A stretch of 64,000 bases of DNA, taken from the sequence record NC_026927.1, one strand, 5' to 3'. Below the pieces are notes generated by a model, which saw only the letters and a list, made by a program, of their open reading frames with translations, was not told the origin of the DNA and did not search any database. The position numbers and the translations under genes are program-made. Shown here one piece after another: positions 2,846 to 36,100 of this stretch; positions within the stretch are counted from its first letter, which is position 1, and each line of letters starts with the position of its first letter.

Positions 2846-3617
2846 AGGATATATCCTGATAGGTATTGGTGATAGGTATCTACAGATGACAGAGAACCTC
2901 ACTAAAACTCTAAAGAAACATGGAGATAATAGAGGATCCCTAACTATCACAAGATCGGATAATAGGGAACTCTATAGTGAGTGTAACACTGAGTTTGAGA
3001 GGAATGGAACTCTACCTAAGATTACCTTAGATAGATACTTACCTTTTGATCACAATATATTCCTAGATGCTGATATGTTATGTGTAGGTGATACACAACA
3101 TGTATGGGATCTATTCAGGAGTAGTGATCAGTTTGTTCAACAGGTAGGATGTTTGGGAAGAGATCCTAACTTCCACGCTCACCAGTATGAGAGTGAGTTG
3201 GGTTTTGAGATTCCTAGAGTCCATGGTGGTTGTATCTACATCAATAGAGAGAAACTAGACCCAGGGTTCTTTCCCTATATGAGAGAGTGTTTCCTAAACT
3301 ATAAACAAATATTTCATAATAGTGGTCTAACCTATAAGAATAGTAGACCAGATCAACCACTATACGCTCTAGCAAATGGTATGTGGGGATTCAAACCTGT
3401 GGATCTATACACTAACCCTATCATGACTATTGTGAATGATAGCACCCCACCCCCACTAGATAGTGTGTTCTTCAATAAGAAGAGGGGTCCTAAGTTAGAT
3501 ACTCCTGTTCCCTTTGTTCATGTATTCCGTGGAGAAGAGGGTATGTCTAGGGGTTATACTAGAGGTGACCAGAAGATGTTGTTGTCCCATTATGATTACT
3601 ACCTGAACTATGAATAA
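2832..3617 (+). CDS. GT-A fold glycosyltransferase (GT8-like)
   Basis: IFLDADML DxD motif, HGGCIYIN, DQPLYALA, and cluster context. Confidence 0.7.
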   Translation: MAGTEGYILIGIGDRYLQMTENLTKTLKKHGDNRGSLTITRSDNRELYSECNTEFERNGTLPKITLDRYLPFDHNIFLDADMLCVGDTQHVWDLFRSSDQFVQQVGCLGRDPNFHAHQYESELGFEIPRVHGGCIYINREKLDPGFFPYMRECFLNYKQIFHNSGLTYKNSRPDQPLYALANGMWGFKPVDLYTNPIMTIVNDSTPPPLDSVFFNKKRGPKLDTPVPFVHVFRGEEGMSRGYTRGDQKMLLSHYDYYLNYE

Positions 3618-20226: not shown

Positions 20227-20601
20227 ATGAATACATATGGTTCTCCTGAAGGCTATCTCTTTAACCTTCATACCTGCTCAGCATCAGAAGCGAAGCGAAT
20301 GTGGAAAGAATCTATAAAGAATGATTGGAAACATAAATGTGCTTATTGTGGATCGGAACATGAAATTACTTTAGATCATATAGTACCCAAAGCGAAAGGG
20401 GGTACTAGTCATACAACCAATGTCGTAGCTTGTTGTCGTTCTTGTAACGGGAGTAAGGCATATGAGGATTGGATTATCTGGTATATTCAACAGCCATTCT
20501 TCACTGAAGAGAGGAGGGAGGCTATTGAAAAGTGGATGGAGAAGGGTCTCCTCAACAATAACTTAGTTGCATATCCACCCAGAAGAAATGTCGTTTATTG
20601 A
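20227..20601 (+). CDS. HNH endonuclease (McrA-like, zinc-binding)
   Basis: CAYCG...TLDHIVPKAKGG...NVVACCRSCNGSK. Confidence 0.88.
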   Translation: MNTYGSPEGYLFNLHTCSASEAKRMWKESIKNDWKHKCAYCGSEHEITLDHIVPKAKGGTSHTTNVVACCRSCNGSKAYEDWIIWYIQQPFFTEERREAIEKWMEKGLLNNNLVAYPPRRNVVY

Positions 20602-20817: not shown

Positions 20818-23800
20818 ATGATCTCAACAGCGACTAAGATTAAATTTAAAAGGTCTGGTGTAGCCGGACGTAGACCCTCCTTAGCTGATCTTCAGTTAGG
20901 TGAATTGGGGATCAATTATAACGATGGTAAACTATTTTTCCGACAGGAAAATGAAGTAGTTGGCTCTCGTATCATTGAACCTGGACAGGGTGATGTAATC
21001 GGTAAGACTATTTTCGTATCCACAAAGGGTAACGATAACAATAGTGGTCTTAACGAAAGGGATGCCAAGAGAACTGTTAAAGCGGCCGCCGCAGTAGCAG
21101 AACCTGGTGACTCCATCAAACTGTATCCAGGTCAGTACATCGAAGATAACCCTATCGTATTTAAGGATAGGGTATCTGTAGAGGGTATGGAGCTTCGTAA
21201 CGTTCTCGTTACTCCAGCCAACCCCAGTAAAGACTTGTACCAAGTTGGTGAGGCGTTCCACGCTACCAACCATTCCTTTGTGTCCAATAGGGATTCAACA
21301 GATGGTGCCTCTATTATCACCTATCGTCCTCTAGAGGGAACTGCGTCTGACAGGTATTTTGACGCGGCTAGACTCATCAGGGACAATCTTAGCTTCATTG
21401 CTAACGAGACAGTAGGTTTCCTAACCAGTGGATATTCAGGCTTTGCCGCTGGTCAGAGATCACAGGACGCTGCTCGTGCTCTAGAACTAAACAAGAACTT
21501 CATAGTAGAAGAAGCATTTCAATATATCAACTCTCCTGATTATACAGGAGCCACATACTTCAACCCAGACCCAGCACAGTGTAAGAGAGACCTAGGAAAT
21601 ATCATTGATGGTTGGAGATATGATCTCATCTCTGATGGTAACACCAGATCTACTGGTCTTGGTCTAACCTACTACGCACCTATTCCCTTTGTGAATAGTG
21701 CTAATGTTGCTGACCTTGTATACAACAGAAATAACGGTGATGTTCTAATTGAAACCGACGTAGATACACAGGTTTCAGTTGGTGAGAAGATCAAACTACA
21801 GGATATCAGACTAGAGTGTGGTTCCTACAACAACGATTTCCTCATCACTGGTTTCAAGTATGATAACACCAGTGGTATTGGAACAGTTAATCTACCCTTT
21901 ATCCATAACGTCAAGGTTGGAGACCTTGTTAAGTTTGATGGTTTAGAGTTTGATTGTCCTGCCTATGGTGCCATTGAATATGGTATCCAAGACTTCAAGT
22001 ATAATGAAACTACTGGTGGAAGTGTTGTCACACTCACCGAAGATCATGATCTAAAGATTGGTGACACCATTGAACTAAGAGACCTTCAGTTCGATTGTCC
22101 CGCCTATGGTGGTGACTTCACTAACATCATCAACCTAGAATACAATAAGACCAGTGGTCAGGGTGTTATCACATATGACAAACCCGCCGATCTCAAGTCT
22201 GGTGACGTTGTTATCCTCTATGACCTCACACTAACTTGTGATGCTTATGGTAACGCTATCTCAGTTACTGATTTCTCTTATGATAACTTCACTGGTATCA
22301 CTGAAGTAGAAGTAAATAGACCCCACAACCTCCGTCCCGGAGACCTAATCAAACTAGAGAACCTTAAGTTCTCTTGTGATTCCTACCTTAATGAAACATA
22401 CAAGGTCTCTAACTTTGTATATAATGAGAGCACTGGTGATAGTGTCCTCACCCTAACTGAACCACATAGTTTAGTTGCTGGTAAGAACGTCAGACTTGCT
22501 GACCTAGTTTTCTCCTGTAACTCCTATGTTCCAACCGCTAAAGCAATCTCTGATTTCCAGTATGATGAAGTAGTTGGTATCTCTACTATTACTCTAGCAT
22601 CTCCACACAACTTATCAGTTGGTGAGCAGTTCAGACTAGAGGATTTAGTATTCTCCTGTAACTCATATTCCTTCACTGATATTCCTATCATTGATGCACC
22701 ATATGATAATGTAACTGGTTATGTAACCCTATCGTTCTCTGGTGACCACGGACAACAGGTTGGTGAGAGAGTAAGACTCAGAGATATTGAGTACTCCTGC
22801 CCTGGTGGTTCAGGTATCACTACAACCTTGTTCCCCGATGGAACCTTTGGTTATGAGTTTGAAATCCTAAGTGTTCCAAACACTAAGAAGATGATTCTTA
22901 ATGTTGGCACCTCCACTATTGAACACTCCTATGTGAGTGGTGGTACTGCTACCGTTGGTATTACAACTACTATCTTCCCTGATGGAACACAAGGTTTCGA
23001 CTTCAATGTATCCAGTGTTAATAGTTCCACTGTTATCGAAGCAAGTGTTGGTATTTCTACCATCGCTCACAACTATGTTTCTGGTGGATCATTATTCGTT
23101 GGTTTCACTACCACAGTATTCCCCGATGGAACACAAGGTGATACCTTCAGAGTTAATTCTATTCCTTCTAGCACTCAAATCAGTGTTAATGTTGGTGTAT
23201 CTTCTATCGCCCATACTTTCGTATCCGGTGGTACAGCAACTGACCTAGACTCTTTCATCCCTGTATCTGGTTTCACCTACAATGAAGGTGACGGAACTGG
23301 ACTAGTATCCCTAGACAAGGCACACAACCTAGTGGTTGGTGACTCTTTTGTTCTAGAGGATCTTAAGTTCAACTGTAACTCCTACAGAACAGGTGGTACT
23401 TCTACTATTGATATCACTAACTTTGAGTATGATAAGGTAACCGGACTATCTACAGTCACACTATCTTCTTCACACAACCTACATGTTAATGATACCGTAG
23501 CACTATATGATATCAAGTTCTCTTGTCCTGGTGGTTCAGGTATTACAACTAATATCTTCCCCGATGGAACCAGAGACAACTTCTATGATGTAGTTGCTGA
23601 CCTAAACCCCAACCAGATTATTGTTCGTGTTGGTAAGTCTGACATTACTCACACATACGCTAGTGGTGGTACTCTATCAGTTGGTATCACTACTAACATC
23701 TTTCCTGATGGAACCAGACCTTCTGGTGACTTCTTCCAGGTCATCTCTGTCCCTTCTACCAAGTCTGTTCTAACTCAGGTTGGTCTATCCTCTATCGCCC

Positions 23801-26800
23801 ACTCATACGCAAGTGGTGGTAAGTTCTACACTGGTATCACTACTAATGTATTCCCACAGGTATTCACTGACCCCAACATCAAGGTAACCAACGCTGTATA
23901 TGACGAAGTATCTGGTGTTATCACCATTACTACTAACAAGGCACACGGACTTACCGATACCGCACCTGTTCTACTACAGGATCTAAACTTCTCTTGCCTC
24001 TCTGGTGGTGTAGGAAACACCCCAGGCAACCTTGTATTCCCCAGGAACCAGGAAGTTTATGATGTTGTGTCCGTTCTATCTACTACACAATATACGATCA
24101 ATGTAGGTCCTTCTGACTTCGCTCACGCATATGTTGATGGTGGTACTTCTACCACACAGAACATCACTAAGGCATCCTACAACAAAGGAACTGGTGATCT
24201 AACAGTAACCCTAGACAAGCAACACGGTTATTCAGTTGGTGATCGTGCTAGTGTGGTTGATCTCCTCTTCTCCTGTCAGTCTGGTGGTCCTAACAACCAA
24301 CCTGGAACACTTCTATTCCCCAGACCTACTGATGAGTATGAAGTTCTATCTGCAAGTGGTAAGACACTCACAGTTAATGTTGGAGCGTTCCCATCACTAG
24401 TTCATACCTATAAGAATGGTGGATCACTAACCTATAGTTCTACTGTACTTCCTGTAAGTAACGCAGTTTATGATCAATCAACTGGAGTTCTAACACTTAC
24501 CACATCAATTGCACTAGGGGCACCTGTTGGTTCTACCATTAAGATGCAGGGTCTAAACTTCTCCTGTGCCTCTGGTGGTCCTGGTAATGACGCTGGTGCT
24601 ATTGTATTCCCAAGACTAGACACCCCTACCTTCAAGGTGAAGGAAGTCAAGAGTGGTGTATCCTATGTTATCAATGTAGGAACCTCCACACTCTCACACA
24701 CCTATACTTCTGGTGGTTTCTCATCACTCAAGAAGTTGAAGAACGACCCCAATATTTTCAAAGTTATCGACACCCCAACACCTAGTAAGGTTATTACTAA
24801 TGTCGGTGTATCCTCTATCGCCCATGACTATGTGAGTGGTGGTAATATGTTCGTGGGTATCACCACTAATGTATTCCCTGATGGAACTCGCCCTGATGGA
24901 AGTAGGTTCGAAGTTATCTCCGCCCTATCACCCAACCAGGCACTCATCAACATCGGTGTTTCTACTATCACCCACAACTACGATAGTGGTGGTAGGATGC
25001 AGTATGGTACTACCAATGAGAGACCTGTTCTAGACTTCCTATACGATGGTCAGACTGGTATCTCCACTGTAACTATTAGAGGAACTCATGGTTTGAACCA
25101 GGGTGACCTAGTGAAACTCAGAGGTCTTGAGTTCGCTTGTACTAACTCACCTGGTATTACAACTACTATCTTCCCAGATGGAACTGCCGCTGGTCTCAAT
25201 ATCTACAAGGTTACTGAGATTATTAGTAACAGTACCTTCAAGACAAATGTAGGTAGAGTTGGATTCGATCATACTTACATCCAAGGTGGTTCCGCTTTCG
25301 TTGGTATCACTACTAACATCTTCCCAGATGGAACACAAGGTTACAACTATACAGTTGCCGCCATTCCTAATAAGAATCAGGTAACAGTTGATGTGGGTAT
25401 CTCCAGTATCCAACATGATTATATTCGTGGTGGATCACTATTCTCTGGTAAGACTAACGAGAGAGATATCGCAGACTTCAAGTATGATCACATCTCTGGT
25501 GATGCGGTTCTTACCTTCAGAAAGGCACAGAACTTATTCACACAAGATCTAGTAAAACTTAAGAACCTTCAGTTTGATTGTCCAAACTCTACTGGTATCA
25601 CTACTACTCTCTTCCCAGACGGAACCAGAAGTAACCTCTTCCTAATCAAGGAGAGACTAAACCCAACACAGTTCAAACTCAATGTTGGCACTTCACCATT
25701 CGGTCATGACTATGTGAGAGGAACAGGTCAGGCATTCGTTGGTATCACTACTAACATCTTCCCTGATACCAAGACACAACCAAGTAAGTTATTCAAGGTT
25801 GTTGATGTCCCAACTCCTACTACTATCTCCGCCAAGATTGGTGTATCCACTATCTCCCACTCATATGTTAAGGGTGGTAAGGTATTCGTTGGTATTAACA
25901 CTGATATCTTCCCTGGAGATGAGCAAGTATCACCACTAGGTGACACATATACAGTTCAGAGTATCACTAAAGATGGTGAGTTGGTTATCAATGTTGGACT
26001 ATCTTCTATCAGTCACTCCTATGGTGGCGGTGGTAAGGTTCTATATGGACAGAGTTCTGGTAACAACCTACAACATATCACTGGTCCTGGTGTACTAGAC
26101 GCAACCATCGCCGCTATCGATTTCGAGAAACAGGTAGCAATCAACGCACTAAACAACAGACCTTGGGGTTCATTCGTTCCTGAAGAGACTGCTGTTGTGG
26201 AGGCGTTCGCCTATGATAACCAGACTGGTTTCGGAACAGTAACCGCTAGGGGAATCAACGTCAACACTGGTGACACCATCAGGATGAGTGACATTCAGTT
26301 TGTTTGTTCTGAGGAGTACGCAGGTGTAACCACTACCTTCTTCCCTGATAATACTAGACCAGAGGGTCAGTACTTTAGAGTAGAAAGAAGAATCAACATC
26401 GATGAGTTTGAAGTTAATATTGGTGTTTCTACTATCAAACACGTATTCAACTACGAAACAGGTGGTAACGTATATCGTTACAGACAGTCTATTCTAGATG
26501 TTAACTACGATAGATCCAGTGGTATCACTAGTATCCGAGCAACCAAGCATGGTTACAAGGCAAAAGATATTGTGGAACTAGGTGATATCGAGTTCGATTG
26601 TCCCGTATTCAAACCTCAATATGATATTGAGAACTTTGTTTATGATAACACAACTGGTCTATCCACAGTTACTACTACTGTAGATAACACTATCAAGGTA
26701 GGTGACAATGTAAAACTAGCAGACATCAAACTAGAGTGTCCTCCATATGGTAACCAGAGAGTTATTGATAACTTTGTTTATGATAACAAGAGTGGTCTTT

Positions 26801-29800
26801 CCACCATATCACTAACAGCAGCACACGGACTCAACCTAAGACCTAGACCTTCTGTTTCTATCTCTACCGCCCTCTATGATAACCAGACTGGTATCCTAAC
26901 CGTTACCACCAATGCTGACATCAACTTCACCGATAGAAGTGGTCAGGGTGTTCAACTCAGTGGTCTAAGGTTCTCCTGTGACTCCGCTGGTTTCCCTGGA
27001 ACTCTCACCTATCCTGAAGAGAATCTAGTTTATGATATCCTAGAGATTCAGTCTCCTAGTAAGTTTAAGATTAATGTTGGTCTCTCCACTATCGCTCACG
27101 AGTATGTGAATGGTGGTGCCGCTACTAAGGTTGATAGATTCGATGTGAAACTACAGGGTATCAAGTTTGATTGTCCCGCCTATGGAAACACAATCGATGT
27201 TACTAACTTCCTATACGATCAGAGAAGTGGTAACTCACTAGTTACCGTAGATAAGGCACACAAACTATCTGTTGGTGATAACATCAAACTAGCGGATCTC
27301 AAGTTCCAATGTGCTCCATATGGTAACGATTACAATGTTCTAAACGCAGATTACGACAACACAACTGGTATTATTACAGTAACCACTAACCAAAACATCA
27401 ACGGTGTTGGTGTTGGTGATACTATTCGCCTCTCCAGACTACAGTTTGATTGTGTAGGTAGTGGTCCTGAGTATAATATCACTAACGTATTCTTCAATAC
27501 TGGTAACAGATCAGTTATTCTCACAGTTCCTGAAAGACCAATTGGTCTAAACCCAGGTGATGACATTAAACTAACCAATATGTCATACCTAGAAGGTGGT
27601 AGTGGTAATGTAGTTGCGTATCCAGACGGAAGAGATTCGAGTCTAAACATCTTCCGTATCAATGATGTTCAACCTAACTCCATTCTCCCTGGATACTTCG
27701 ATGTAACCACAGCGTTCCCCAATGTTAAGGATCCTTTCGCGATCTTCAACAATACTGGTAGACTAACCACTGGTATTACTACTAACATCTACCCTGAGAA
27801 TGTAGGTGCTGAAGGTGGTTTCTATGAAGTTATCCGCCTAAGACAAGATAACCAGTTTGAGATTCAGGTAGGAACCTCTACTATCACTCACAACTATGTG
27901 AGACAAGGACAGATGTTCACTGGTGTAACCACCAACTTCTTCCCTGGTAACCTACAGAACTCACCTAGAGGAAACATCTTTGAGATTGTGGAAGTTCCCA
28001 CAGCAACACAGGTGAGAATCAATGTAGGTGTATCTTCTATCTCTCATAGTTATGATAGTGGTGGTCAGATGTTTGTTGGTATTACTACTAACATCTTCCC
28101 TGATGGAACCAGAGGTAACCTATTCCCAGTTGTTGGAGTGGCAAATACTCTCACCCTAAGAATCGACGCGGGTGTATCCAGTATCCCCCACAACTATGTT
28201 TCTGGTGGAGAACTATTCGTAGGTATTACAACTAATATCTTCCCTGGTAACTCACAGAACTCACCAAGAGGTAGTATCTTCAAGGTCCTATCTAAGGATA
28301 ATGAGTGTGGTTCTGATAGATTCACTATCAACGTTGGTGTATCTTCTATCACTCACGGTTATGTTGAGGGTGGAACAGTCACCACTGGTGTTACAACTAA
28401 TAAGTTCCCTGATGGAACACACGGATTCAAGTTCCCTGTTATCGATGTTCTAGATGACAACTACTTCACCGTGAATGTTGGTACTTCTACTATCACTCAC
28501 AACTATATCTCTGGTGGTTTCACTAGAAGACTTGAAGTTCCTATCAATAGTTTCGTATATGATAGAGTTTCTGGTCTATCCACAGTGGGTATCCAAAGTC
28601 ACAGAATGAATATCGGTGACCTTGTGAAACTTCGTGATGTGAAGTTCAACTGTGATCCATATGGTGGAGAAAAGACTATCTCTGGTGTTGTTTATGATAA
28701 TACCTCTGGTAGAATGACCGTTAACACCACTGGTTCTCATAGTCTAAACATCAATGATGTTGTGAAACTCTCCAATATTCAGTTGGATTGTTCCCCATAT
28801 GGTAACGAGAGAACTATTACCGCCGCCACCTACAACAGAAACAATGGAAACCTAAGTGTTCAGGTATCTGAACCTCACAACCTCAAGATTAGTGAGAATG
28901 TGAAACTTAAAGGTTTAGAGTTCTCCTGTTCCTCAGAACACGCAGGTGTGACAACAACAATCTTCCCAGATTCAACCGCACCTTCTCTAAACATCTACGC
29001 CATCCAGAGTATCACCAACTCCACAACCTTCATGGTTAATGTTGGAACCTCTACTATCAGTCACAACTATGTTTCTGGTGGTTCCGCTTTCGTAGGTATC
29101 ACAACTAACATCTTCCCAGGTGATAGCCAGAACTCCCCCAGAGGTTCTTTCCTCAGTGTGGTAGATATCCCAGCATCAGACGCCTTCGTGGTGAATGTAG
29201 GGGTTTCTACTATCTCTCACGGGTATGTTAGAGGTGGATTGGTTCAGACAGGTATTACAACTGATGTATTCCCTGATGGAACACAGAGTGATTTCTTCAA
29301 GATTGAAGATGTCCCTAGTAATAATACAGTTGTAATCAACGCAGGTATCTCTTCTATCATCCATAGATACAACTCTGGTGGTTTCGCCGCCAAGTATGTT
29401 ACCTATCAGTCCAATAACTCACAACTACTTGATAGTTCTGTTATTAGAGTGAGTGGTGATTGTATGGCAGTTGGTGAGAGAGTTGAAGAACTCGCAGGTA
29501 TTGTTACCTCCATCATCAAGAATGGTCCTTCAATCGCACCTGGTGGTATTCCAGTAGATGTGGTAAGTGCATCCTACGACCAGTCTGGTGGAGCACTATC
29601 AGTCACAGTCAAAGACGCAATTGACCTCACACCAACTAACATAGTTAGAATCGAAGGTCTTATCTTCGAGTGTGAGTCCTCTGGTGTAACAAACACTCGT
29701 GTATATCCTGACAATAAGGTATTCAACTATGAGGTTCTATCAGTTCAGTCTCCAACAACCTTCACTATCAATGTAGGTTCTCAGGCAGATATCCCACACA

Positions 29801-32721
29801 CATATGTGAATGGTGGAACTGTAAGACCAGGTAACAAGTTTGATGTGGCAACCGCAACCTACAATACTGAAAATGGTATTGTGAGAGTTACTACCACTGA
29901 AGATAACTACTTGGTTCTTGGTAGAGGAGTTAACCTACAGGGTCTAAACTTCTCCTGTACCTCTGGTGGTCCTAACAACAAACCTGGAACACTAACCTTC
30001 CCCGACAAAACACCAACCAATGTAACCGCCGCCACATATGATAGTGTGACTGGTGTATTACGTATCACAACCAACAGACCTCACCAAGCATACAAGGACG
30101 CGTTTGTATCCCTAAACGGACTAACCTTCACTTGTGATCCAGGTGGTCCTCTAGTATTCCCTAGAAACCCTGATACTAAGTCCTTCAGAGTTACTAAGAG
30201 AGTTGATGACTACACATATGAGTGTCAGTTGGCACCAACCAATAAGGTTCATACTTATCTAAGTGGTGGTACTTCATCCACAGGAAACGGAAACTTCAGA
30301 GTTTCTCGTCTCATTGATACAAAGACCTTCGAAGTCACAATGGTTCCTCTAGATCTACCACATACCTATGTAAATGGTGGTTCCGCCGCTAGTGTATTCA
30401 CTAGACAGATCATTGATGGAATCAACATCAACACTAGGAAGTGTGCTAGAGACGTTAGACGTATCTACCTCGCAGTGGCACACGATATCACTCGTGGTGG
30501 TAACTGGAAGTGTGTTGAAGGAGCGAAACTCTACTACGATAACGTGGGTCAAACCAAGTTTATCTCTGGTGGTGAAGTAAATCAAACCGTTGAGGCACTT
30601 GACTTCTCCCTAAACATTGTTAGATGTTTAATCAACAACGTAACATGGGGTGGAGTTCCAAGAGGATATCTCACTAAGGGTGAGAGAAGTGAACTAAGAA
30701 TTCCATCTTCAGCTAAGACTTCAGTGGTTGGTTTCAGACAACAACTACTTTCCAACCAATATACTACTGAGAAAAAGAATATCTCAGGTATGATATACGA
30801 TAACCTTACGGGTATCGCAACCGTCACTACTAAACTCTCTCACGAACTCATCAAGTATGATGGTATTCAACTCTCAGATATTGAGATGAGATGTACTGGT
30901 AGTCCAAGGATTACCACCAATGTATTCCCTGATGGAACACAAGGTGAGATCTTTGAGGTTATGGAAACTTTAGATGATAGAGTAGCATACATCGTAACTG
31001 ACGCGTCATACACCAACACCACTGGTAAGTTGGTAGTAACAACAACAGGAAACAATGATATTCCTGTTGGATCAAGAGCAAAACTAGATGGTTTACTCTG
31101 GACTTGTTCATACGATCCTTCAAAACAACTTAAGTTCCCAGAGAACAGGAAGTTCCGTTATGAGGTTATCGCAAAACCAGATGGTACAACACTAGAGTTC
31201 AATGTTGGTATCTCTACGATTCCACACACATTTGTTCCAGCTCCTATAGATGTTGAATACACAGTCAAGGAGGATCCAGTTAAGTTTAAGGTTCATGTTG
31301 GTACAGTTTCCTTCCCACACACCTACTTCGGTGGTGGAACAGTATGGCACAAACTACCATTCACTCCACCTTTCACCCAAACACAGATCAAGGACGTATC
31401 ACAACAGAAAGATCCAGTCCAGTTCTCTAACAATACTCCTAACGGATGTGCTAATGTATTCTCCGCTATCAGTAATTGTATTGGTGTTGTTACTAGTATC
31501 GTAGCAAATGGATTAGAAGGATCAGGTATCTCCACAACTTATCCAGGTAATGATGGTAAAGGTGTTCCAACTATGGATGAGATGCCTTCACAGGGTGTTG
31601 GTAACATTATCAAAGGTCCATACATCAGAAACTGTACGAACTTCGTTCCCAAGTCTATTGGTATGAGAATGGATGGTTTCGACGCGGAACCTGGTGATGA
31701 AATCTCCAATGGTGTTCAAGGTTCATCTAACGTTGACTCCTTCACCCAGTTCAACCCTGGTGGTGTTGGTTGTTCCATCTCTAACGGAACCTACCAACAG
31801 TTGGTTTCTATCTTCACTATCTGTTGTGATGAAGCAATCGTATGTGACTCTGGAGCACAACTCGACCTCACTAACTCCAACTCTTCCTTCGGTAGATTGG
31901 GTCTAGTCGCAAGAGGTATTGGTGATAAACTCTCCAAGTGTATCGACAGATATACTGGTATCGTCGCCAAAGAGGCATCAATCGAAGATGACCTAGTTGT
32001 TGTGAAGGGTATTGGTGATAAGAGACCCTACGATGGTCAGGGTATTTTCTTCGGAGAACTCTTCAGGGATGTGGTTAGTATCGAAGTTCTGGACGGTGGT
32101 TCAGGTTACAACGATGATATTCCACCTAACGCGTTTGTCGCAGAACCTACTGGTCCCGCTGGTATTAAGGCGGAAGTTTCACCAACAGTCAGAGATGGTG
32201 TTGTTGTTTCTATCGAGGTTATCGCAAATGGTAACCAATACAGAGAGAAATTCCCTGAGGTTGTAATATCACCTCCTAAGAGTCCTCTTGGTAGAACCGC
32301 AAAAGCAAGGGCAATTACCGAACCTCTCTACTATAATGTAGAAAGTTCTTCCCCACCTGAAGAGGGTACAACTAGTATCATCTTCAAACAGCGTCTAAAT
32401 AATACCGTATCGGTAGGCACAACTGTATTCTTCTCTAGATTAAGTCTACAGATTGCCTCCTCTCACTCCTTCGAATACATTGGTGCTGGTAACAGCATTA
32501 ACGGAGCAAGACCTTCTGAAGGTGGAGTTCCAATTAAGGAAAATGAGATCGTGAAGGAAGACGGTGGTTCAATTGTCTATACCTCCACTGACCAGGCAGG
32601 TAACTTTAACATTGGTGACGATTTCGTTATCAACCAGTTCACTGGTACTATCACTGGTAGATCGTTCGATCAATCAGTCCTAAATAAAGTTACTCCACTC
32701 ATCATCGCCCTAGACAGTTAA
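20818..32721 (+). CDS. Giant (3967 aa) virion fibre/structural protein with nested repeat domains
   Basis: The N-terminus KIKFKRSGVAGRRPSLADLQLGELGIN resembles the T4 gp37 N-terminus. It has a split beta-helix-like scaffold, helical CxRD...INN domains, 31 two-part repeat domains and a late promoter. Confidence 0.85.
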   Translation: MISTATKIKFKRSGVAGRRPSLADLQLGELGINYNDGKLFFRQENEVVGSRIIEPGQGDVIGKTIFVSTKGNDNNSGLNERDAKRTVKAAAAVAEPGDSIKLYPGQYIEDNPIVFKDRVSVEGMELRNVLVTPANPSKDLYQVGEAFHATNHSFVSNRDSTDGASIITYRPLEGTASDRYFDAARLIRDNLSFIANETVGFLTSGYSGFAAGQRSQDAARALELNKNFIVEEAFQYINSPDYTGATYFNPDPAQCKRDLGNIIDGWRYDLISDGNTRSTGLGLTYYAPIPFVNSANVADLVYNRNNGDVLIETDVDTQVSVGEKIKLQDIRLECGSYNNDFLITGFKYDNTSGIGTVNLPFIHNVKVGDLVKFDGLEFDCPAYGAIEYGIQDFKYNETTGGSVVTLTEDHDLKIGDTIELRDLQFDCPAYGGDFTNIINLEYNKTSGQGVITYDKPADLKSGDVVILYDLTLTCDAYGNAISVTDFSYDNFTGITEVEVNRPHNLRPGDLIKLENLKFSCDSYLNETYKVSNFVYNESTGDSVLTLTEPHSLVAGKNVRLADLVFSCNSYVPTAKAISDFQYDEVVGISTITLASPHNLSVGEQFRLEDLVFSCNSYSFTDIPIIDAPYDNVTGYVTLSFSGDHGQQVGERVRLRDIEYSCPGGSGITTTLFPDGTFGYEFEILSVPNTKKMILNVGTSTIEHSYVSGGTATVGITTTIFPDGTQGFDFNVSSVNSSTVIEASVGISTIAHNYVSGGSLFVGFTTTVFPDGTQGDTFRVNSIPSSTQISVNVGVSSIAHTFVSGGTATDLDSFIPVSGFTYNEGDGTGLVSLDKAHNLVVGDSFVLEDLKFNCNSYRTGGTSTIDITNFEYDKVTGLSTVTLSSSHNLHVNDTVALYDIKFSCPGGSGITTNIFPDGTRDNFYDVVADLNPNQIIVRVGKSDITHTYASGGTLSVGITTNIFPDGTRPSGDFFQVISVPSTKSVLTQVGLSSIAHSYASGGKFYTGITTNVFPQVFTDPNIKVTNAVYDEVSGVITITTNKAHGLTDTAPVLLQDLNFSCLSGGVGNTPGNLVFPRNQEVYDVVSVLSTTQYTINVGPSDFAHAYVDGGTSTTQNITKASYNKGTGDLTVTLDKQHGYSVGDRASVVDLLFSCQSGGPNNQPGTLLFPRPTDEYEVLSASGKTLTVNVGAFPSLVHTYKNGGSLTYSSTVLPVSNAVYDQSTGVLTLTTSIALGAPVGSTIKMQGLNFSCASGGPGNDAGAIVFPRLDTPTFKVKEVKSGVSYVINVGTSTLSHTYTSGGFSSLKKLKNDPNIFKVIDTPTPSKVITNVGVSSIAHDYVSGGNMFVGITTNVFPDGTRPDGSRFEVISALSPNQALINIGVSTITHNYDSGGRMQYGTTNERPVLDFLYDGQTGISTVTIRGTHGLNQGDLVKLRGLEFACTNSPGITTTIFPDGTAAGLNIYKVTEIISNSTFKTNVGRVGFDHTYIQGGSAFVGITTNIFPDGTQGYNYTVAAIPNKNQVTVDVGISSIQHDYIRGGSLFSGKTNERDIADFKYDHISGDAVLTFRKAQNLFTQDLVKLKNLQFDCPNSTGITTTLFPDGTRSNLFLIKERLNPTQFKLNVGTSPFGHDYVRGTGQAFVGITTNIFPDTKTQPSKLFKVVDVPTPTTISAKIGVSTISHSYVKGGKVFVGINTDIFPGDEQVSPLGDTYTVQSITKDGELVINVGLSSISHSYGGGGKVLYGQSSGNNLQHITGPGVLDATIAAIDFEKQVAINALNNRPWGSFVPEETAVVEAFAYDNQTGFGTVTARGINVNTGDTIRMSDIQFVCSEEYAGVTTTFFPDNTRPEGQYFRVERRINIDEFEVNIGVSTIKHVFNYETGGNVYRYRQSILDVNYDRSSGITSIRATKHGYKAKDIVELGDIEFDCPVFKPQYDIENFVYDNTTGLSTVTTTVDNTIKVGDNVKLADIKLECPPYGNQRVIDNFVYDNKSGLSTISLTAAHGLNLRPRPSVSISTALYDNQTGILTVTTNADINFTDRSGQGVQLSGLRFSCDSAGFPGTLTYPEENLVYDILEIQSPSKFKINVGLSTIAHEYVNGGAATKVDRFDVKLQGIKFDCPAYGNTIDVTNFLYDQRSGNSLVTVDKAHKLSVGDNIKLADLKFQCAPYGNDYNVLNADYDNTTGIITVTTNQNINGVGVGDTIRLSRLQFDCVGSGPEYNITNVFFNTGNRSVILTVPERPIGLNPGDDIKLTNMSYLEGGSGNVVAYPDGRDSSLNIFRINDVQPNSILPGYFDVTTAFPNVKDPFAIFNNTGRLTTGITTNIYPENVGAEGGFYEVIRLRQDNQFEIQVGTSTITHNYVRQGQMFTGVTTNFFPGNLQNSPRGNIFEIVEVPTATQVRINVGVSSISHSYDSGGQMFVGITTNIFPDGTRGNLFPVVGVANTLTLRIDAGVSSIPHNYVSGGELFVGITTNIFPGNSQNSPRGSIFKVLSKDNECGSDRFTINVGVSSITHGYVEGGTVTTGVTTNKFPDGTHGFKFPVIDVLDDNYFTVNVGTSTITHNYISGGFTRRLEVPINSFVYDRVSGLSTVGIQSHRMNIGDLVKLRDVKFNCDPYGGEKTISGVVYDNTSGRMTVNTTGSHSLNINDVVKLSNIQLDCSPYGNERTITAATYNRNNGNLSVQVSEPHNLKISENVKLKGLEFSCSSEHAGVTTTIFPDSTAPSLNIYAIQSITNSTTFMVNVGTSTISHNYVSGGSAFVGITTNIFPGDSQNSPRGSFLSVVDIPASDAFVVNVGVSTISHGYVRGGLVQTGITTDVFPDGTQSDFFKIEDVPSNNTVVINAGISSIIHRYNSGGFAAKYVTYQSNNSQLLDSSVIRVSGDCMAVGERVEELAGIVTSIIKNGPSIAPGGIPVDVVSASYDQSGGALSVTVKDAIDLTPTNIVRIEGLIFECESSGVTNTRVYPDNKVFNYEVLSVQSPTTFTINVGSQADIPHTYVNGGTVRPGNKFDVATATYNTENGIVRVTTTEDNYLVLGRGVNLQGLNFSCTSGGPNNKPGTLTFPDKTPTNVTAATYDSVTGVLRITTNRPHQAYKDAFVSLNGLTFTCDPGGPLVFPRNPDTKSFRVTKRVDDYTYECQLAPTNKVHTYLSGGTSSTGNGNFRVSRLIDTKTFEVTMVPLDLPHTYVNGGSAASVFTRQIIDGININTRKCARDVRRIYLAVAHDITRGGNWKCVEGAKLYYDNVGQTKFISGGEVNQTVEALDFSLNIVRCLINNVTWGGVPRGYLTKGERSELRIPSSAKTSVVGFRQQLLSNQYTTEKKNISGMIYDNLTGIATVTTKLSHELIKYDGIQLSDIEMRCTGSPRITTNVFPDGTQGEIFEVMETLDDRVAYIVTDASYTNTTGKLVVTTTGNNDIPVGSRAKLDGLLWTCSYDPSKQLKFPENRKFRYEVIAKPDGTTLEFNVGISTIPHTFVPAPIDVEYTVKEDPVKFKVHVGTVSFPHTYFGGGTVWHKLPFTPPFTQTQIKDVSQQKDPVQFSNNTPNGCANVFSAISNCIGVVTSIVANGLEGSGISTTYPGNDGKGVPTMDEMPSQGVGNIIKGPYIRNCTNFVPKSIGMRMDGFDAEPGDEISNGVQGSSNVDSFTQFNPGGVGCSISNGTYQQLVSIFTICCDEAIVCDSGAQLDLTNSNSSFGRLGLVARGIGDKLSKCIDRYTGIVAKEASIEDDLVVVKGIGDKRPYDGQGIFFGELFRDVVSIEVLDGGSGYNDDIPPNAFVAEPTGPAGIKAEVSPTVRDGVVVSIEVIANGNQYREKFPEVVISPPKSPLGRTAKARAITEPLYYNVESSSPPEEGTTSIIFKQRLNNTVSVGTTVFFSRLSLQIASSHSFEYIGAGNSINGARPSEGGVPIKENEIVKEDGGSIVYTSTDQAGNFNIGDDFVINQFTGTITGRSFDQSVLNKVTPLIIALDS

Positions 32722-32725
32722 GATC

Positions 32726-33076
32726 ATGGCAGCAGTTGCTTTAAATACGTTCAAAACGGTCAGGCATTTAGTTTCTGATTCCAATGTGGGGATTTATACA
32801 TCCCCCATTGGTGTTGCCTCTATTGTCCTATACGCTCAGGCGACACACGTTGCGAACGATGAAAGTGTATATTTCATTAACTTTTCACATGCTCGTCCCG
32901 ACGAGGATCCTGTGCAGTTTGAAATCATTAAGGATGGTCCAGTTATCCCTAATGACGCACTAAACCTATTAACAGGTAGATTAGTTCTCGAAACTGGAGA
33001 CGAACTTAGAGTATCAGGAAATACGACCGGAGATGTGAAGGTTGTTGTTTCTATTCTAGAGACTGCAAAGTCTTAA
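32726..33076 (+). CDS. Small virion-associated companion protein
   Basis: IYTSP.GVASIVLYAQ...LVLETGDELRV; translationally adjacent to the giant gene. Confidence 0.65.
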   Translation: MAAVALNTFKTVRHLVSDSNVGIYTSPIGVASIVLYAQATHVANDESVYFINFSHARPDEDPVQFEIIKDGPVIPNDALNLLTGRLVLETGDELRVSGNTTGDVKVVVSILETAKS

Positions 33077-33108: not shown

Positions 33109-36100
33109 ATGCCTCTAAATTATCTTACCGGAAGAGTAAGTAGATTACAAGTTGGATTTCCAGGGTTTTCAACAGCAAAGGACCTTACAGTTGATGTAGC
33201 AGGTGCCATTGGTATTGATACCCAAAACCCAAGAGCAGCTGCCGACTTCCCAGATGTCAGTATCCGTGGTGATATTGTTGACTCTGTTGGATTTACCGGT
33301 GGTATTGGGTATTTTCTAGCGCAAGATGTTCAGGGTGTTCGGTGGGTAGAGGCTCCACCTATCAACTCTAACGCCATCTTAGTGTTAGACAATGGAGTTA
33401 TCGTTGGTGCTGGATCATTCATTGGTCTAAACTTTGACTCTGGTAAGGATGAGGACTTCCTCTCGGTTGTTCCTGACCCACTAAACCCACAGATTGCAAA
33501 GATTGCATATGATGTTCGTTGGGTAAGATATAATTACGGTAATAATAAAGGTATCTCCACAGGTTTTGGAGATAATGGTGACTACTCCTCTATCCCTGGT
33601 TATGGAACCACAGAGGCAGTTGGTGTTACCTCAGTTGGTATTGGTACTAACCAACCACTAGATGACTTCCAAGTTGGTATTGGATCTACTGGTGTTACTA
33701 TCAACGGACCTCTAGGTCTAGTTGATGCAGAAATTATTAAAGCAAAATCAATCTCGGTTGAAGGAAACCTAGAGGTTGAATCACTTATTGTTAGACCTGG
33801 TGTTGCCACTCTAACCACTCTAGATGTATTGAACGAGGCGTTCATACCAGTAGAGTATGTTGGTTTCTCCAGCATTCAAGATGCAAATATTGATGCTCTC
33901 TTTGCTAATCAGTTACTAGCAGGTATTACTACCCTAGGTTTCGGTGGTGAAGATGTATTCATCCTCAACGACTTATATGTTCAGGGTGGTTTAGGTACCT
34001 TCGATGGCGACGTATTCGTTGGTGGAGACCTAACTGTTAAGGGTGAGACGTTCTTCAACCAGATTAACGCAGTCAACTTATCAGTATCTGGTATTGCCAC
34101 TATCGTCCAAGCGGAGATAGCTGTTGGTTTAGTTACCGATCTAAAAGTATCTGGTTTCTCTACACTATCAGATTTCTCATTCAACATTGGTGTTGGTACA
34201 TACCTAGAACTAGAAGATCTAGATGTATCTGGTGTTGGTAGTTTTGGTGTTGTCAACTCTGGTGATATTAATGTTAGTGGTGGTTTAACCGCTAGTGAGA
34301 TTGATGCAGATAAGGGATACATTGGTATTCTCACAGCAGACTCTATTGTATCTGGTGCAGGTACTATTGGTTCTATCGAGTCTGATGGGAACCTAACAAC
34401 ACTTAATGATATTATTGTTGGTGGTGCTTCAACCTTCGTTGGTTTGGGTACTTTCCAAGACGATCTCTTTGTTGGTGGTGACCTCTTTGTTAGAGGTGAT
34501 GTTACCTTTAAGAATATTAATGGTGAACAACTACTAATCAGTGGTATTGGTACCATCAAGGAACTAGTCTTTGATAGTGGTATTGGAACCTCACTAGAAG
34601 TGAGAGATCAGATTACGACTGGTATATCTACGATCAATGAAGCAGATATTCAAGATGCCGCTGTTGAGAGACTTACTGTTGGTGATGCAGAGATCATCGG
34701 TATCGCAACTATTACCGAGATTGATGTAGATAGAGGTAGAGTTGGTATCCTAACTGGTACAGACCTCTCCTATGCTGGTATCGGTACTATCACGGAGATT
34801 GATGTTGACCAGGGTAGAGTTGGTCTAGTCACTGGTGACACACTACTATACTACGAACAGTCTAGGATCAATAGAGTTACCTTCTTTGATAACTACCTAT
34901 CAGTTAATCAGAGTCTAAGAGTTTCTGGTCTCTCCACCTTTGTTGGAACAGGTACATTCTTCAATGACTTGTATGTTGGTGGTGACCTATATGTTGCTGG
35001 TGAACTAAACTTCAAACAACTCAATGGTGAGAACCTATACCTAACTGGTGTTGGTACCATCTATGATCTACGTAACACTGTTGGCTTCATTACTAACCTC
35101 TACGTAGAAGAGTCTGTAACTGGTTTAGCAACCATCAGTAGTCTAGTTGGTTCTTCCGCCACTATCACAGACTTCACTGGTGAGTCACTACTCATCCAGA
35201 ATCCATTCAACCCAATGCCTCTGGACCCAACTGGGATCCCAGGACAGGGTGTTATTGATAGTCTCCTAGTTAGAAACCTAACTTCCTCTAACAACATTCT
35301 AGCCAATGACATTGATGCCAACTTCGTTGACACCGATGATCTAAAGGCTGGTGTTGGTACTATCACTGACCTAGAGTGGACTACCGCTGTTGGTGATGAC
35401 ACTACTACCAATACTCTACAGGTTACTGATACAGCAACCATTAACATCATCGATGCCAATCAGATCGATGCCGAAGATGCTAATATTGGAGTTGCCACCC
35501 TCTCTAGTCTCCTAGTAACTGGTGTCACTACCTTCAAGGGTCAGGTTGATATTGAGGATATTGAGTTCGTTGACCAGAGTGTCACCGGTATTTCCTCTAT
35601 CAACATCCTCAAGTTCAATGTTGGTTATGGAACTTACCTAGAGGTCACTGACTCAGTAACTGGTGTTGGAACTATTGGTCTTGCCAGTATCACAACCGCT
35701 CAGGTATCCTTCCTAGATGTAAGAGATGAGGTAGTTGGAGCATCCACTATTGGTGTTCTATCAGTAACTGAAGGATTTGCAGTATCTGGTTTCTCCACCT
35801 TTGTTGGTTTCACTACCTATAAAGGAGATGTATTTGTTGATGGTAACTTAACTGTTACTGGTTTCGTTAGTTTCACACAACTAAACGCTGATCAATCACA
35901 GATTGGTATCCTAACTGTATTCGATGCGTTAGACGCTAGAACGGGTGTTGGTACATTCAAACACCTAGAGACAGTAGATAGTGCAGTTCTATCAGGTGTA
36001 TCTACCATTGGACTCACAACCTTCAAGAATGGTGATGTTAATATCAACCGCAACTTAACAGTTGGTGGTATCACTACCTTCATTGGTAATGTTTTCATTG

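What the first reader, a model, noticed from the sequence alone, without database searches (positions are those of the whole stretch)
21691..31347. Giant fibre built from 31 domains nested inside each other like balanced brackets
Seen in sequence: the repeats are not simple tandem copies but two alternating half-domains of about 47 aa. Half A is ..Y(D/N)..(T/S)G...(V/I)....H.L..GD.V.L..L.F.C and half B is GITT..FPDGT....F.V........NVG.S.I.H.Y..GG. Parsed by hand, block 1 (21691-26043) reads AAAAAAAA BBB AA BB b[AB AB AB]b' B AB B AB BB. That is 15 A and 15 B, the depth never goes negative, and it returns to zero exactly where a helical domain resumes. Blocks 2-4 (26191-29391, 29554-30393, 30778-31347) also balance, with 11, 3 and 2 domains; one B half is divergent. 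A ends in C-x-x-Y/F when another A follows, and mostly in C-x-G-G or C-x-x-S when it is closed directly. The helical domain CKRD...YY (21580) is itself split and resumes at ...TIAAIDF...ALNN (26062), whereas its paralog at 30439-30639 has these two segments contiguous. Inference: the chain runs out through A halves and back through B halves, giving a branched, self-zipping monomeric stalk up to 8 domains deep that grew by iterative domain-in-domain insertion. I know of no description of such an architecture in a virion protein.
Basis: partly seen in the sequence, partly recalled or inferred. Interest (0 to 1): 0.88.

Follow-up and report, generated by a model that had tools for sequence, protein, structure and literature searches.

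The report
Phage fibre of 31 nested barrels
A 3,967-residue tail-fibre-like protein of a marine cyanophage holds 31 copies of one small beta-barrel domain inserted inside one another up to eight levels deep, which is deeper and larger than the six-level record reported for any protein.

Summary
The window is Synechococcus phage ACG-2014f, and the region is one intact ORF (20818-32721, 3,967 aa, AAJ63_gp265, "hypothetical protein").

- **Parse:** One innermost B half is too divergent to detect.
- **Relatives:** All 32 relatives with E = 0 parse the same way. Every architectural difference between them is a balanced gain or loss.
- **Short orthologs:** Syntenic orthologs carry 1 (S-T4), 4 (S-CAM9) and 5 (S-SCSM1, annotated as a virion protein) domains.
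- **Unit domain:** Dozens of unrelated small proteins carry exactly one contiguous A+B, so the unit is a roughly 90-aa A+B domain.
- **AlphaFold2:** The third strand of an A half forms only when its bracket-matched B half is in the construct.
- **Paralog history:** Matched halves share it (Mantel p about 0.001).
- **Helical host domain:** It is split by block 1.

The fold looks like a six-stranded insertion-type beta-barrel (weak matches to the E1 FCCH and endosialidase barrels). Recursive self-nesting is already known in cyanobacterial RNA polymerase Si3 (8 domains, 6 levels). I therefore call this a new and more extreme variant, undescribed in virion proteins. Stalk shape, oligomeric state and function remain inferred.

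The parts
20818..32721 (+). Giant ORF, 3,967 aa (AAJ63_gp265 / YP_009134476.1), intact with no internal stops
20818..21294 (+). N-terminal core (aa 1-159): tail-fibre-type N-terminus and the start of a DUF1565-like beta-helix (below the Pfam cut-off)
   Evidence: tblastn hits to annotated tail fibre genes of many cyanophages. DUF1565 profile positions 2-61 match aa 70-126, E 0.003, below cut-off.
21295..21687 (+). Helical host domain, copy 1, first piece (aa 160-290)
   Evidence: Aligns to S-T4 aa 155-245, E 5e-20, and to the internal paralog, E 0.011.
21688..26037 (+). Block 1 (aa 291-1740): 15 A+B barrels, nesting depth 8, inserted into helical domain copy 1
   Evidence: HMM parse. AF2 models of aa 384-1393 and aa 431-760.
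23827..23865 (+). N-terminal piece of the split B half of domain 5 (aa 1004-1016)
   Evidence: Partial B hit, HMM columns 1-11/24. Present as b< in most relatives.
24736..24846 (+). C-terminal piece of the split B half of domain 5 (aa 1307-1343). It follows three complete AB barrels inserted in its loop.
   Evidence: B hit, HMM columns 14-45, E 6e-12
26038..26178 (+). Helical host domain, copy 1, second piece (aa 1741-1787)
   Evidence: Aligns to S-T4 aa 250-282, E 2e-4, and to the paralog at aa ~3254-3284, E 1e-4.
26179..29385 (+). Block 2 (aa 1788-2856): 11 barrels, as AB, then a 7-domain nest (depth 6), then AAABBB
26746..26841 (+). N-terminal piece of a split A half (aa 1977-2008). A complete AB (aa 2009-2103) is inserted after it.
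   Evidence: A hit, HMM columns 2-25, E 5e-7. Some relatives have AABB at this site.
27139..27183 (+). C-terminal piece of the same split A half (aa 2108-2122)
   Evidence: A hit, HMM columns 30-42, E 1e-3
27460..27768 (+). Divergent innermost barrel of the 7-domain nest (aa 2215-2317). The A half is weak and lacks the Cys. The HMM does not detect the B half.
   Evidence: A hit E 1e-4. A 62-67 aa unassigned gap at depth 6 appears in most of the relatives.
29386..29541 (+). Non-repeat spacer (aa 2857-2908)
   Evidence: No A or B hit; a 59-60 aa gap at this position in the relatives with E = 0 that extend this far
29542..30384 (+). Block 3 (aa 2909-3189): 3 barrels, as AB, then an A whose B half is split by an inserted AB
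30385..30762 (+). Helical domain, copy 2, contiguous (aa 3190-3315)
   Evidence: Aligns without interruption to S-T4 aa 206-282, E 8e-16
30763..31341 (+). Block 4 (aa 3316-3508): 2 barrels. The inner one sits in a different loop of the outer B half (near HMM column 26).
   Evidence: B pieces cover HMM columns 3-26 and 23-45
31342..32718 (+). C-terminal core (aa 3509-3967), shared with the short orthologs
   Evidence: 46% identity to S-T4 aa 292-834, 52% to S-SCSM1 aa 1065-1475, 47-49% to S-CAM9. PHROG 5342 'tail fiber protein'.
32726..33076 (+). Conserved 116-aa downstream gene. It is a syntenic partner of the fibre gene in S-T4, S-CAM9 and S-SCSM1.
   Evidence: Synteny. PHROG 1276. 34% identity to the N-terminal half of ~220-aa proteins that carry one AB barrel.

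Best explanation
**What it is.** The gene encodes a tail-fibre or tailspike-like virion protein of a T4-like cyanophage.

**Conserved core.** Short orthologs of 836-1,478 aa share it. It consists of:
- an N-terminal attachment region;
- a probable beta-helix;
- a C-terminal domain.

**Insertions in ACG-2014f.** About 3,300 residues are inserted into that core. They make up two helical domains and 31 copies of one domain of about 90 aa.

**The repeated domain.**
- It is a small, probably six-stranded, beta-barrel.
- Half A gives three strands and ends in an almost invariant Cys.
- Half B gives three or four strands and carries an almost invariant His.
- The loop between A and B is the main insertion site. 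Three minor sites exist: one loop in A and two loops in B.

**Chain path.** Whole barrels have been inserted into these loops again and again. The chain therefore runs outward through up to eight A halves, closes the innermost barrel, and returns through the matching B halves. Each barrel is completed by two segments that lie up to 1,353 residues apart.

**Inferences, not shown:**
- Folding proceeds from the inside out, with each closed barrel bringing the next pair of halves together.
- The result is a branched, two-stranded chain of beads projecting from each subunit of the fibre.
- Balanced gains and losses of barrels tune the length of that projection.
- By analogy with the lectin-like barrel inserted in phage endosialidases, the barrels act as spacers and/or multivalent binders of host surface glycans.

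**Confidence.** The figure of 0.8 applies to the nested-barrel architecture. I put the virion-fibre role at about 0.75 and an adhesin function at about 0.4.
For: **Shown here.**
- Dyck-word parse here and in all 32 relatives with E = 0. Block 1 returns to depth 0 exactly at the 55-59 aa helical piece in the 30 relatives (P0001-P0030) that share this block layout.
- At least five distinct architectural differences between these relatives, all balanced and none unbalanced.
- A^nB^n nests in other giant cyanophage protein families, for example AAAABBBB, AAAAABBBBB and about 10 deep in P0033-P0035.
- About 70 proteins of ~618 aa or ~220 aa with exactly one contiguous AB.
- Syntenic orthologs with 1 (S-T4), 4 (S-CAM9) and 5 (S-SCSM1) balanced barrels between the same N- and C-terminal cores.
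- AF2: strand 3 of A4, A5 and A6 is present when B4, b5/b5' and B6 are in the construct and absent when they are not. Matched A7 and A8 are complete in both constructs.
- The A7-A8-B8-B7 part superposes on an independent BFVD model of another protein over 193 columns at rmsd 3.4 A.
- Mantel correlation of A-half and B-half paralog identities under bracket matching: r = 0.31, reached by 15 of 20,000 permutations. For nested domains only, r = 0.37, reached by 138 of 20,000. First-in-first-out matching gives r = 0.04.
- Log-odds couplings trained on directly closed barrels favour bracket-matched nested halves: z about 2.7-2.8, p about 0.002-0.003. The sign is the same in the other families tested.
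- The helical host domain is split.

**Virion and fibre role.**
- The S-SCSM1 ortholog carries the record note 'long tail fiber protein (virion protein)'. That phage's paper reports virion mass spectrometry.
- PHROG tail-fibre families match.
- The gene lies next to giant baseplate genes.

**Fold.** Foldseek matches UBA6/Uba1, endosialidase barrels and the P22 coat protein at probability 0.9-1.0 but E >= 3e-3. A BFVD protein named 'Endosialidase, beta barrel domain' also matches.
Against: - No contact map or coordinates were available, so A(n)-B(n) contact is inferred from secondary structure and confidence, not seen.
- The AF2 models are of moderate confidence (pLDDT 72-77, pTM 0.36-0.38). 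In the long construct the unmatched A3 did not have lower pLDDT than the matched halves.
- The coupling test using only the top 25 column pairs was not significant (z about 0.6).
- In distant families many A halves are followed by stretches that match the B model only weakly (E 1e-3 to 1). The rule is therefore demonstrated only for closer relatives.
- The fold assignment rests on weak Foldseek E-values and low TM-scores.
- Virion location is documented for an ortholog, not for this protein.
- Oligomeric state, overall shape and any binding function are untested.
- A single tandem duplication cannot turn AB into AABB, so the DNA-level route of growth is unexplained.
Confidence: 0.8

Rival explanations
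1. Domain-swapped oligomer. The A halves of one chain are completed by B halves of another chain, for example in an antiparallel dimer or within a trimeric fibre. The bracket rule would then reflect inter-chain rather than intra-chain pairing for the outer levels.
For: - Balanced counts and nesting-consistent indels would also be required by such pairing.
- The core resembles proteins that are usually trimeric: tail fibres, tailspikes and an endosialidase-annotated homolog.
- Only monomers were modelled.
Against: - Directly closed barrels have 0-9 residues between A and B, so they must close within one chain.
- Proteins with a single AB exist.
- AF2 completes A4-A6 within one chain when their partners are supplied in cis.
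- Inside-out closure in cis brings each next pair of halves together through 5-8 residue connectors. This makes cis pairing the simpler reading.
Confidence: 0.07
2. Two independent repeat families. A and B would be autonomous small beta units arranged in runs, and their equal numbers would have no structural meaning.
For: In the long AF2 construct the unmatched A3 still has pLDDT 74-84, so an A hairpin may have some stability of its own.
Against: - Chance probability of the four Dyck words is 1.2e-5 in this protein alone.
- The same property holds in 32 relatives, with only balanced differences.
- Single contiguous AB units occur in about 70 other proteins, and no confident A-only or B-only complete protein was found among close relatives.
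- Strand 3 of A depends on the presence of the matched B.
- Paralog histories of matched halves are correlated.
Confidence: 0.03
3. Same nested architecture, different role. The nest would be a passive length-setting spacer or a shield around the baseplate, or a decoration that is not involved in host recognition.
For: - The number of barrels differs widely between relatives (1 to 35) while the core is conserved. This fits a tunable spacer.
- No binding site was identified.
Against: - The fold's nearest matches include the lectin-like barrel of endosialidases.
- The barrel also occurs as an add-on in several other tail-fibre-type proteins with Mtd_N and Peptidase_S74 domains.
- Neither point is strong.
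Confidence: 0.3

Closest known systems
Si3 insertion of cyanobacterial RNA polymerase beta' (nested sandwich-barrel hybrid motifs; PMC10895346, PMC13114784)
   Same: - One small beta-rich fold is inserted recursively into copies of itself.
- Several domains are therefore built from distant chain segments, and the array forms an elongated appendage.
- It is itself an insertion in a host domain.
- It has been described as the most complex case, six levels, in a survey of 2.7 million domains.
   Different: - Si3 has 8 domains and 4-6 levels in about 645 residues. This protein has 31 domains (35 in a relative), 8 levels (about 10 in relatives), plus two outer host levels, in about 3,300 residues.
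- The fold differs by present evidence: no RNA polymerase chain is among the 50 listed PDB Foldseek matches.
- The context differs: an extracellular virion fibre rather than an enzyme.
- The number of barrels here varies strongly between close relatives.
Single-level insertion barrels: endosialidase beta-barrel domain (phi92, K1F), E1 FCCH domain (Uba1/UBA6), P22 coat protein
   Same: - They are the best structural matches to the AB barrel: Foldseek probability 0.9-1.0 and a BFVD 'Endosialidase, beta barrel domain' protein.
- PF16190 (E1_FCCH) is precomputed on three relatives.
- From my own knowledge, not checked here: these are small beta-barrels whose termini lie together and that occur as insertions in a host domain, and the P22 match would correspond to that protein's inserted barrel (I-domain).
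   Different: - These are inserted once, not into themselves.
- The matches are weak (E 3e-3 to 0.3, TM about 0.2).
- No sequence similarity was found: Pfam, NCBIfam and PDB sequence searches gave no hit for the repeats.
- Homology is therefore not established.
Short syntenic orthologs: S-T4 AXQ70473.1 (836 aa), S-CAM9 YP_009322460.1 (920 aa), S-SCSM1 YP_010669719.1 (1,478 aa, 'long tail fiber protein (virion protein)')
   Same: - Same N- and C-terminal cores (33-52% identity).
- Same genomic neighbourhood, with a ~115-aa gene downstream.
- Same AB barrel, always balanced.
   Different: - They hold 1, 4 (AABB AABB) and 5 (AB AAABBB AB) barrels, against 31 here.
- In S-CAM9 the barrels sit at a different site of the core, after the beta-helix-like part.
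Ordinary tandem bead arrays in phage and cell-surface proteins (Ig-like, FN3, BACON repeats)
   Same: Many copies of one small beta domain build a long extracellular appendage. The large AF2 model's Foldseek hits are such arrays.
   Different: In those arrays each domain is contiguous (ABABAB) and one strand links neighbouring beads. Here the order is A...AB...B, the domains are discontinuous, and two connectors link each bead to the next.

Membership tests
Recursive nested domain-insertion architecture (type case: RNA polymerase Si3) | Copies of one fold are inserted into copies of the same fold, giving discontinuous domains in a properly nested order | tested here: met
   Dyck-word parse in this protein and 32 relatives. 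AF2 strand 3 of A appears only when the matched B is present.
Recursive nested domain-insertion architecture (type case: RNA polymerase Si3) | Sandwich-barrel hybrid motif fold | tested here: not met
   No RNA polymerase beta' chain is among the 50 listed Foldseek PDB matches. The best matches are E1 FCCH and endosialidase barrels.
Phage tail fibre / tailspike (virion protein) | Homology to proteins established or annotated as tail fibres | tested here: met
   - The N-terminal 295 aa hit genes annotated as tail fibre, long tail fibre distal subunit or endosialidase in many phages.
- PHROGs 17885 and 5342 are 'tail fiber protein'.
- These are annotations, not experiments.
Phage tail fibre / tailspike (virion protein) | Presence in the virion | not testable with these tools
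   Only indirect: the S-SCSM1 ortholog's record note reads '(virion protein)', and that phage's paper reports virion mass spectrometry. I found no data for ACG-2014f.
Phage tail fibre / tailspike (virion protein) | Right-handed beta-helix core (DUF1565 / pectate-lyase-like) | tested here: inconclusive
   DUF1565 matches aa 70-126 at E 0.003, 17.4 bits against a cut-off of 20.3. The C-terminal part has no Pfam hit.
Phage tail fibre / tailspike (virion protein) | Trimeric assembly | not tested
   Only monomer models were made.
Six-stranded insertion beta-barrel (E1 FCCH / endosialidase barrel-like) | Structural superposition with significant score | tested here: inconclusive
   Foldseek probability 0.9-1.0, but E 3e-3 to 0.1 and TM about 0.2 on a 330-residue multi-domain query. 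A BFVD 'Endosialidase, beta barrel domain' protein matches at E 7e-4.
Any curated sequence family for the A+B repeat (Pfam, NCBIfam, PDB sequences) | Profile or sequence match above threshold | tested here: not met
   No Pfam, NCBIfam or PDB sequence hit for the whole protein, for a single barrel, or for a 13-member barrel profile.
Simple tandem repeat array | Head-to-tail order of complete units (ABABAB) | tested here: not met
   The order is A8 B3 A2 B2 and so on. Only 13 of the 31 barrels are directly closed.

The most novel reading that the evidence does not exclude
This would be a previously undescribed way to build a phage fibre.
- A single chain forms a branched rod of discontinuous barrels by recursive self-insertion, instead of three intertwined chains or a string of contiguous beads.
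- It would fold inside-out like a zipper.
- Evolution would set its length in whole-barrel steps, from 1 to 35 barrels among syntenic orthologs.
- With 8-10 levels, plus two host levels, it would be the deepest domain nesting known in any protein.
- It would be a natural extreme case of non-local folding, with halves of one barrel up to 1,353 residues apart.
Probability: 0.5. Interest if true: 0.8.

Novelty: new variant of a known kind. Interest (0 to 1): 0.68.

Why it matters
**Protein architecture.** A 2026 survey of 2.7 million classified domains singled out six-level nesting in cyanobacterial RNA polymerase as the extreme of insertion architecture (PMC13114784). This phage protein exceeds it in depth (8, and about 10 in relatives) and fourfold in domain number. 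A graded series of natural relatives with 1, 4, 5, 21-23 and 31-35 barrels shows the growth steps.

**Protein folding.** Up to eight half-barrels must stay unpaired while more than a thousand residues are made. This is a natural test case for inside-out hierarchical folding.

**Phage biology.** It gives a structural reading for a large class of unannotated giant 'hypothetical' proteins in abundant marine cyanophages. It also defines a new, apparently cyanophage-restricted domain family (631 cluster representatives among 1.84 billion proteins) that curated databases lack. That family probably contributes to adsorption structures that vary between closely related phages.

Tried and rejected
- **First-pass HMMs.** Models built from this gene alone gave apparent imbalances in relatives. 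Iterating on the relatives removed them, so they were sensitivity artefacts.
- **Sequence searches.** Pfam, NCBIfam and PDB sequence searches of the whole protein, of one barrel and of a barrel profile gave nothing usable.
- **Foldseek with the 1,010-residue model.** It returned only generic multi-domain beta arrays at TM about 0.06. The 330-residue model was more informative.
- **pLDDT as a read-out of pairing.** In the long construct the unmatched A3 scored like the matched halves. Strand content and the two-construct comparison were the useful read-outs.
- **Coupling test with the 25 strongest column pairs.** It was not significant (z about 0.6). Only the all-pairs log-odds reached z about 2.7. 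Many top couplings reflect joint loss of near-invariant residues or barrel subtype, not contacts.
- **A-only proteins.** I considered that A-only proteins in distant families contradict the rule. At relaxed thresholds most of those A halves are followed by weak B-like matches, so this is unresolved rather than contradictory.
- **Joining A(n) to B(n).** All comparisons used native contiguous pieces or the halves apart.
- **Tool-printed consensus lines.** The lines the alignment tool printed by itself were also not used.
Full report
**1. Identity and integrity**

- The window matches Synechococcus phage ACG-2014f (NC_026927.1; Kyanoviridae, Atlauavirus) at 100% identity. The flagged region lies inside one 11,904-nt ORF (20818-32721, + strand, 3,967 aa, no internal stop), annotated AAJ63_gp265 'hypothetical protein'.
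- Forty-three isolates carry it at 99% identity or more. Internal DNA repeats are old, at most about 70-80% identity over at most 250 nt. The repeat structure is therefore neither an assembly artefact nor recent.
- Upstream are photosynthesis and carbon-metabolism genes and an HNH endonuclease. Downstream are a 116-aa gene and three giant 'baseplate wedge' genes.

**2. The observation**

- I built profile HMMs for half A and half B from the gene and iterated them on the relatives with E = 0 until the hit lists were stable (973 A and 964 B hits in 33 proteins).
- In the window they hit only this ORF.
  - block 1 (aa 291-1740) has 15 domains, depth 8, with one B half split by three complete ABs;
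  - block 2 (1788-2856) has 11 domains;
  - block 3 (2909-3189) has 3 domains;
  - block 4 (3316-3508) has 2 domains.
One A half is split by an inserted AB (aa 1977-2008 / 2108-2122). The split B of block 4 is interrupted in a different loop from that of block 1. Four insertion sites are therefore in use, and the A|B junction is by far the commonest.
- One innermost barrel (aa 2215-2317) is divergent. Its A half is weak and its B half is undetected.
- The chance of four Dyck words from 31 A and 31 B is 1.2e-5.
- The junction rule is real. An aromatic residue three positions after the Cys occurs in 14 of 16 A-to-A junctions and 0 of 14 A-to-B junctions here. In the relatives the counts are 388 of 475 and 0 of 380.

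**3. Comparative evidence that A and B are two halves of one domain**

- All 32 relatives with E = 0 (42-98% identical, 2,226-4,318 aa) parse as Dyck words. In the 30 that share this block layout (P0001-P0030), block 1 returns to depth 0 exactly at the 55-59 aa helical piece.
- They differ by whole barrels only:
  - AB vs AABB inside the split A;
  - AB vs AABB, and AABb' vs AAABb'b', in block 3;
  - three vs four ABs in the split B;
  - a 7-domain vs a 15- or 16-domain block 1.
- A separate family of 4,500-5,500 aa proteins with a YHYH domain, and fibres with Mtd_N and Peptidase_S74 domains, contain the same halves as AAAABBBB, AAAAABBBBB, AAABBB, AABB and nests about 10 deep.
- About 70 proteins of ~618 aa or ~220 aa carry exactly one contiguous AB.
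- A profile of 13 directly closed barrels finds 631 cluster representatives in 1.84 billion proteins. The family is small and, by the named hits, confined to cyanophage-like sequences.
- In the most distant members the B half falls below my model's threshold, but weak B-like matches follow most A halves.

**4. Short orthologs and host domains**

- The N-terminal 295 aa have homologs in 116 phage records, mostly cyanomyoviruses, annotated as tail fibre or baseplate proteins.
- In the same genomic position, followed by the same ~115-aa gene, other phages have shorter orthologs:
  - S-T4, 836 aa: N-terminus, one contiguous helical domain, one AB, then a C-terminus 46% identical to aa 3393-3965 here;
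  - S-CAM9, 920 aa: AABB AABB placed after a beta-helix-like segment that matches aa 3594-3739 here;
  - S-SCSM1, 1,478 aa: AB, AAABBB, AB. Its record note reads 'long tail fiber protein (virion protein)'. The paper on that phage reports virion mass spectrometry.
- S-T4's helical domain aligns first to aa 160-286 and then to aa 1750-1784 of the giant. It aligns without a break to the second copy at aa 3201-3278. Block 1 is therefore inserted in a helical domain.
- The helical domains and blocks sit between parts of the core that are closer together in the short orthologs.

**5. Structure prediction**

Both jobs used native contiguous fragments and an alignment of 25-27 relatives placed in the orthologous register.

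| Construct | Content | pLDDT / pTM | Result |
|---|---|---|---|
| Job 1, aa 384-1393 | Unmatched A3 plus the complete domain 4 with all it contains | 71.5 / 0.38, all-beta | Every matched A half has three strand elements. A3 has only the first two. |
| Job 2, aa 431-760 | A4 A5 A6 A7 A8 B8 B7, ending just before B6 | 76.7 / 0.36 | A4, A5 and A6, now unmatched, show only the first hairpin and lower confidence. A7 and A8 have all three strands and pLDDT 80-93. |

- The same three sequences therefore gain or lose strand 3 according to whether the bracket-matched B half is present. The two B halves supplied in job 2 complete the last two A halves, not the first two.
- This agrees with last-in-first-out pairing. 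It argues against first-in-first-out pairing, A-A pairing and independent folding.
- The tools return no coordinates, so contacts are not seen directly.
- The nested pair A7-A8-B8-B7 superposes on an independent BFVD model of another protein over 193 columns at 3.4 A.

**6. Statistical tests of pairing with the halves kept apart**

- Pairwise identities among A halves correlate with those among their bracket-matched B halves: r = 0.31, with 15 of 20,000 permutations as high.
- For nested domains only, r = 0.37 with 138 of 20,000 as high. First-in-first-out matching gives r = 0.04.
- Log-odds couplings learnt from directly closed barrels (effective number 380) score bracket-matched nested halves above permuted partners in this protein and two relatives (z 2.7-2.8). 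The sign is the same in four other proteins.
- A version using only the top 25 column pairs was not significant.
- These tests are supportive, not decisive.

**7. Fold and function**

- The barrel has no sequence relatives in Pfam, NCBIfam or the PDB.
- Foldseek's best PDB matches to the 330-residue model are the E1 enzymes UBA6/Uba1, phage endosialidases, the P22 coat protein and F1-ATPase chains. Probabilities are 0.9-1.0, but E is 3e-3 or weaker. The match to an E1 enzyme fits the precomputed PF16190 (E1_FCCH) on three relatives.
- From my own knowledge, several of these proteins carry a small beta-barrel that is itself an insertion domain.
- I read the unit as a six-stranded insertion-type barrel with adjacent termini. 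Homology to any of these is not established.
- Five columns are invariant in the 13 leaf barrels: Tyr, Gly, Cys, Pro and His. The Cys is present in 99.6% and the His in 95.9% of detected halves. Their role is unknown.
- Function is inferred from context: a fibre-type virion protein whose barrels act as spacers and/or lectin-like binders.

**8. Comparison with what is known**

- Recursive self-insertion of one fold is documented for the Si3 insertion of cyanobacterial RNA polymerase. It has eight sandwich-barrel hybrid motifs, four of them discontinuous, is 150 A long, and is described as six-level nesting and the extreme case in a 2026 survey.
- The phage protein shares the principle. It differs in fold, scale (31-35 domains, 8-10 levels, plus two host levels), cellular context and variability between relatives.
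- My searches found no description of such an architecture in a virion protein.
- I therefore rate it a new variant of a known kind.

**9. Verdict**

The central interpretation, nested half-domain pairing that grew by domain-in-domain insertion, is supported by independent comparative, statistical and predictive evidence.
- 'Monomeric', 'stalk' and 'self-zipping' remain hypotheses.
- How AB becomes AABB at the DNA level is unexplained, because no single tandem duplication can do it.

**10. Declared slip**

Noticed in passing
window 32726-33076 (+): - The 116-aa gene just downstream is conserved in the same position in S-T4, S-CAM9 and S-SCSM1, where it is annotated 'virion protein'.
- It belongs to PHROG 1276.
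- It is 34% identical (E 7e-14) to the N-terminal half of ~220-aa metagenomic proteins whose C-terminal half is one AB barrel.
- It could be a partner or assembly factor of the fibre.
   Followed up: partly
every A half and B half of the ORF 20818-32721: - Each barrel has an almost invariant Cys at the end of half A (99.6% of detected halves) and an almost invariant His in half B (95.9%), plus invariant Tyr, Gly and Pro.
- About 30 single cysteines in an extracellular protein suggest a metal site or a covalent link in each barrel.
- Divergent copies tend to lose these residues together.
   Followed up: partly
proteins P0033-P0120, e.g. P0034, P0037, P0047: A different family of 4,500-5,500 aa cyanophage proteins with a YHYH domain (PF14240) carries the same barrel in nests up to about 10 deep near residues 3,200-4,800. 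Fibres with Mtd_N and Peptidase_S74 domains carry smaller nests. The barrel is a mobile module among tail proteins.
   Followed up: partly
L002:9007-11769 (S-CAM9) compared with window 20818-32721: In S-CAM9 the barrels (AABB AABB) sit after the beta-helix-like segment of the core. In S-T4, S-SCSM1 and ACG-2014f they sit before it. The same module has therefore entered the core at two or more different places.
   Followed up: partly
proteins P0031, P0032, P0230, P0232: In these ~1,700-2,260 aa relatives a 335-362 aa stretch that is neither A nor B sits at nesting depth 2. This suggests that a different domain type can be nested inside a barrel.
   Followed up: no
window 22001-32000: GC skew is negative (-0.13 to -0.04) across the repeat-bearing part of the giant gene and positive in nearly all of the rest of the window. 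This probably follows from the repeats' amino-acid composition.
   Followed up: no
window 20227-20601 (+): An HNH endonuclease gene (PHROG 2214, E 2e-37) lies immediately upstream of the giant gene. Whether such a mobile nuclease has any part in rearranging the repeats is unknown.
   Followed up: no
window 33109-38715 (+) and the two giant genes after it: The following giant 'baseplate wedge' genes (1,868, 2,518 and 1,586 aa) have no A or B halves, but PHROG scans show internal repeats of their own. Their architecture was not examined.
   Followed up: no
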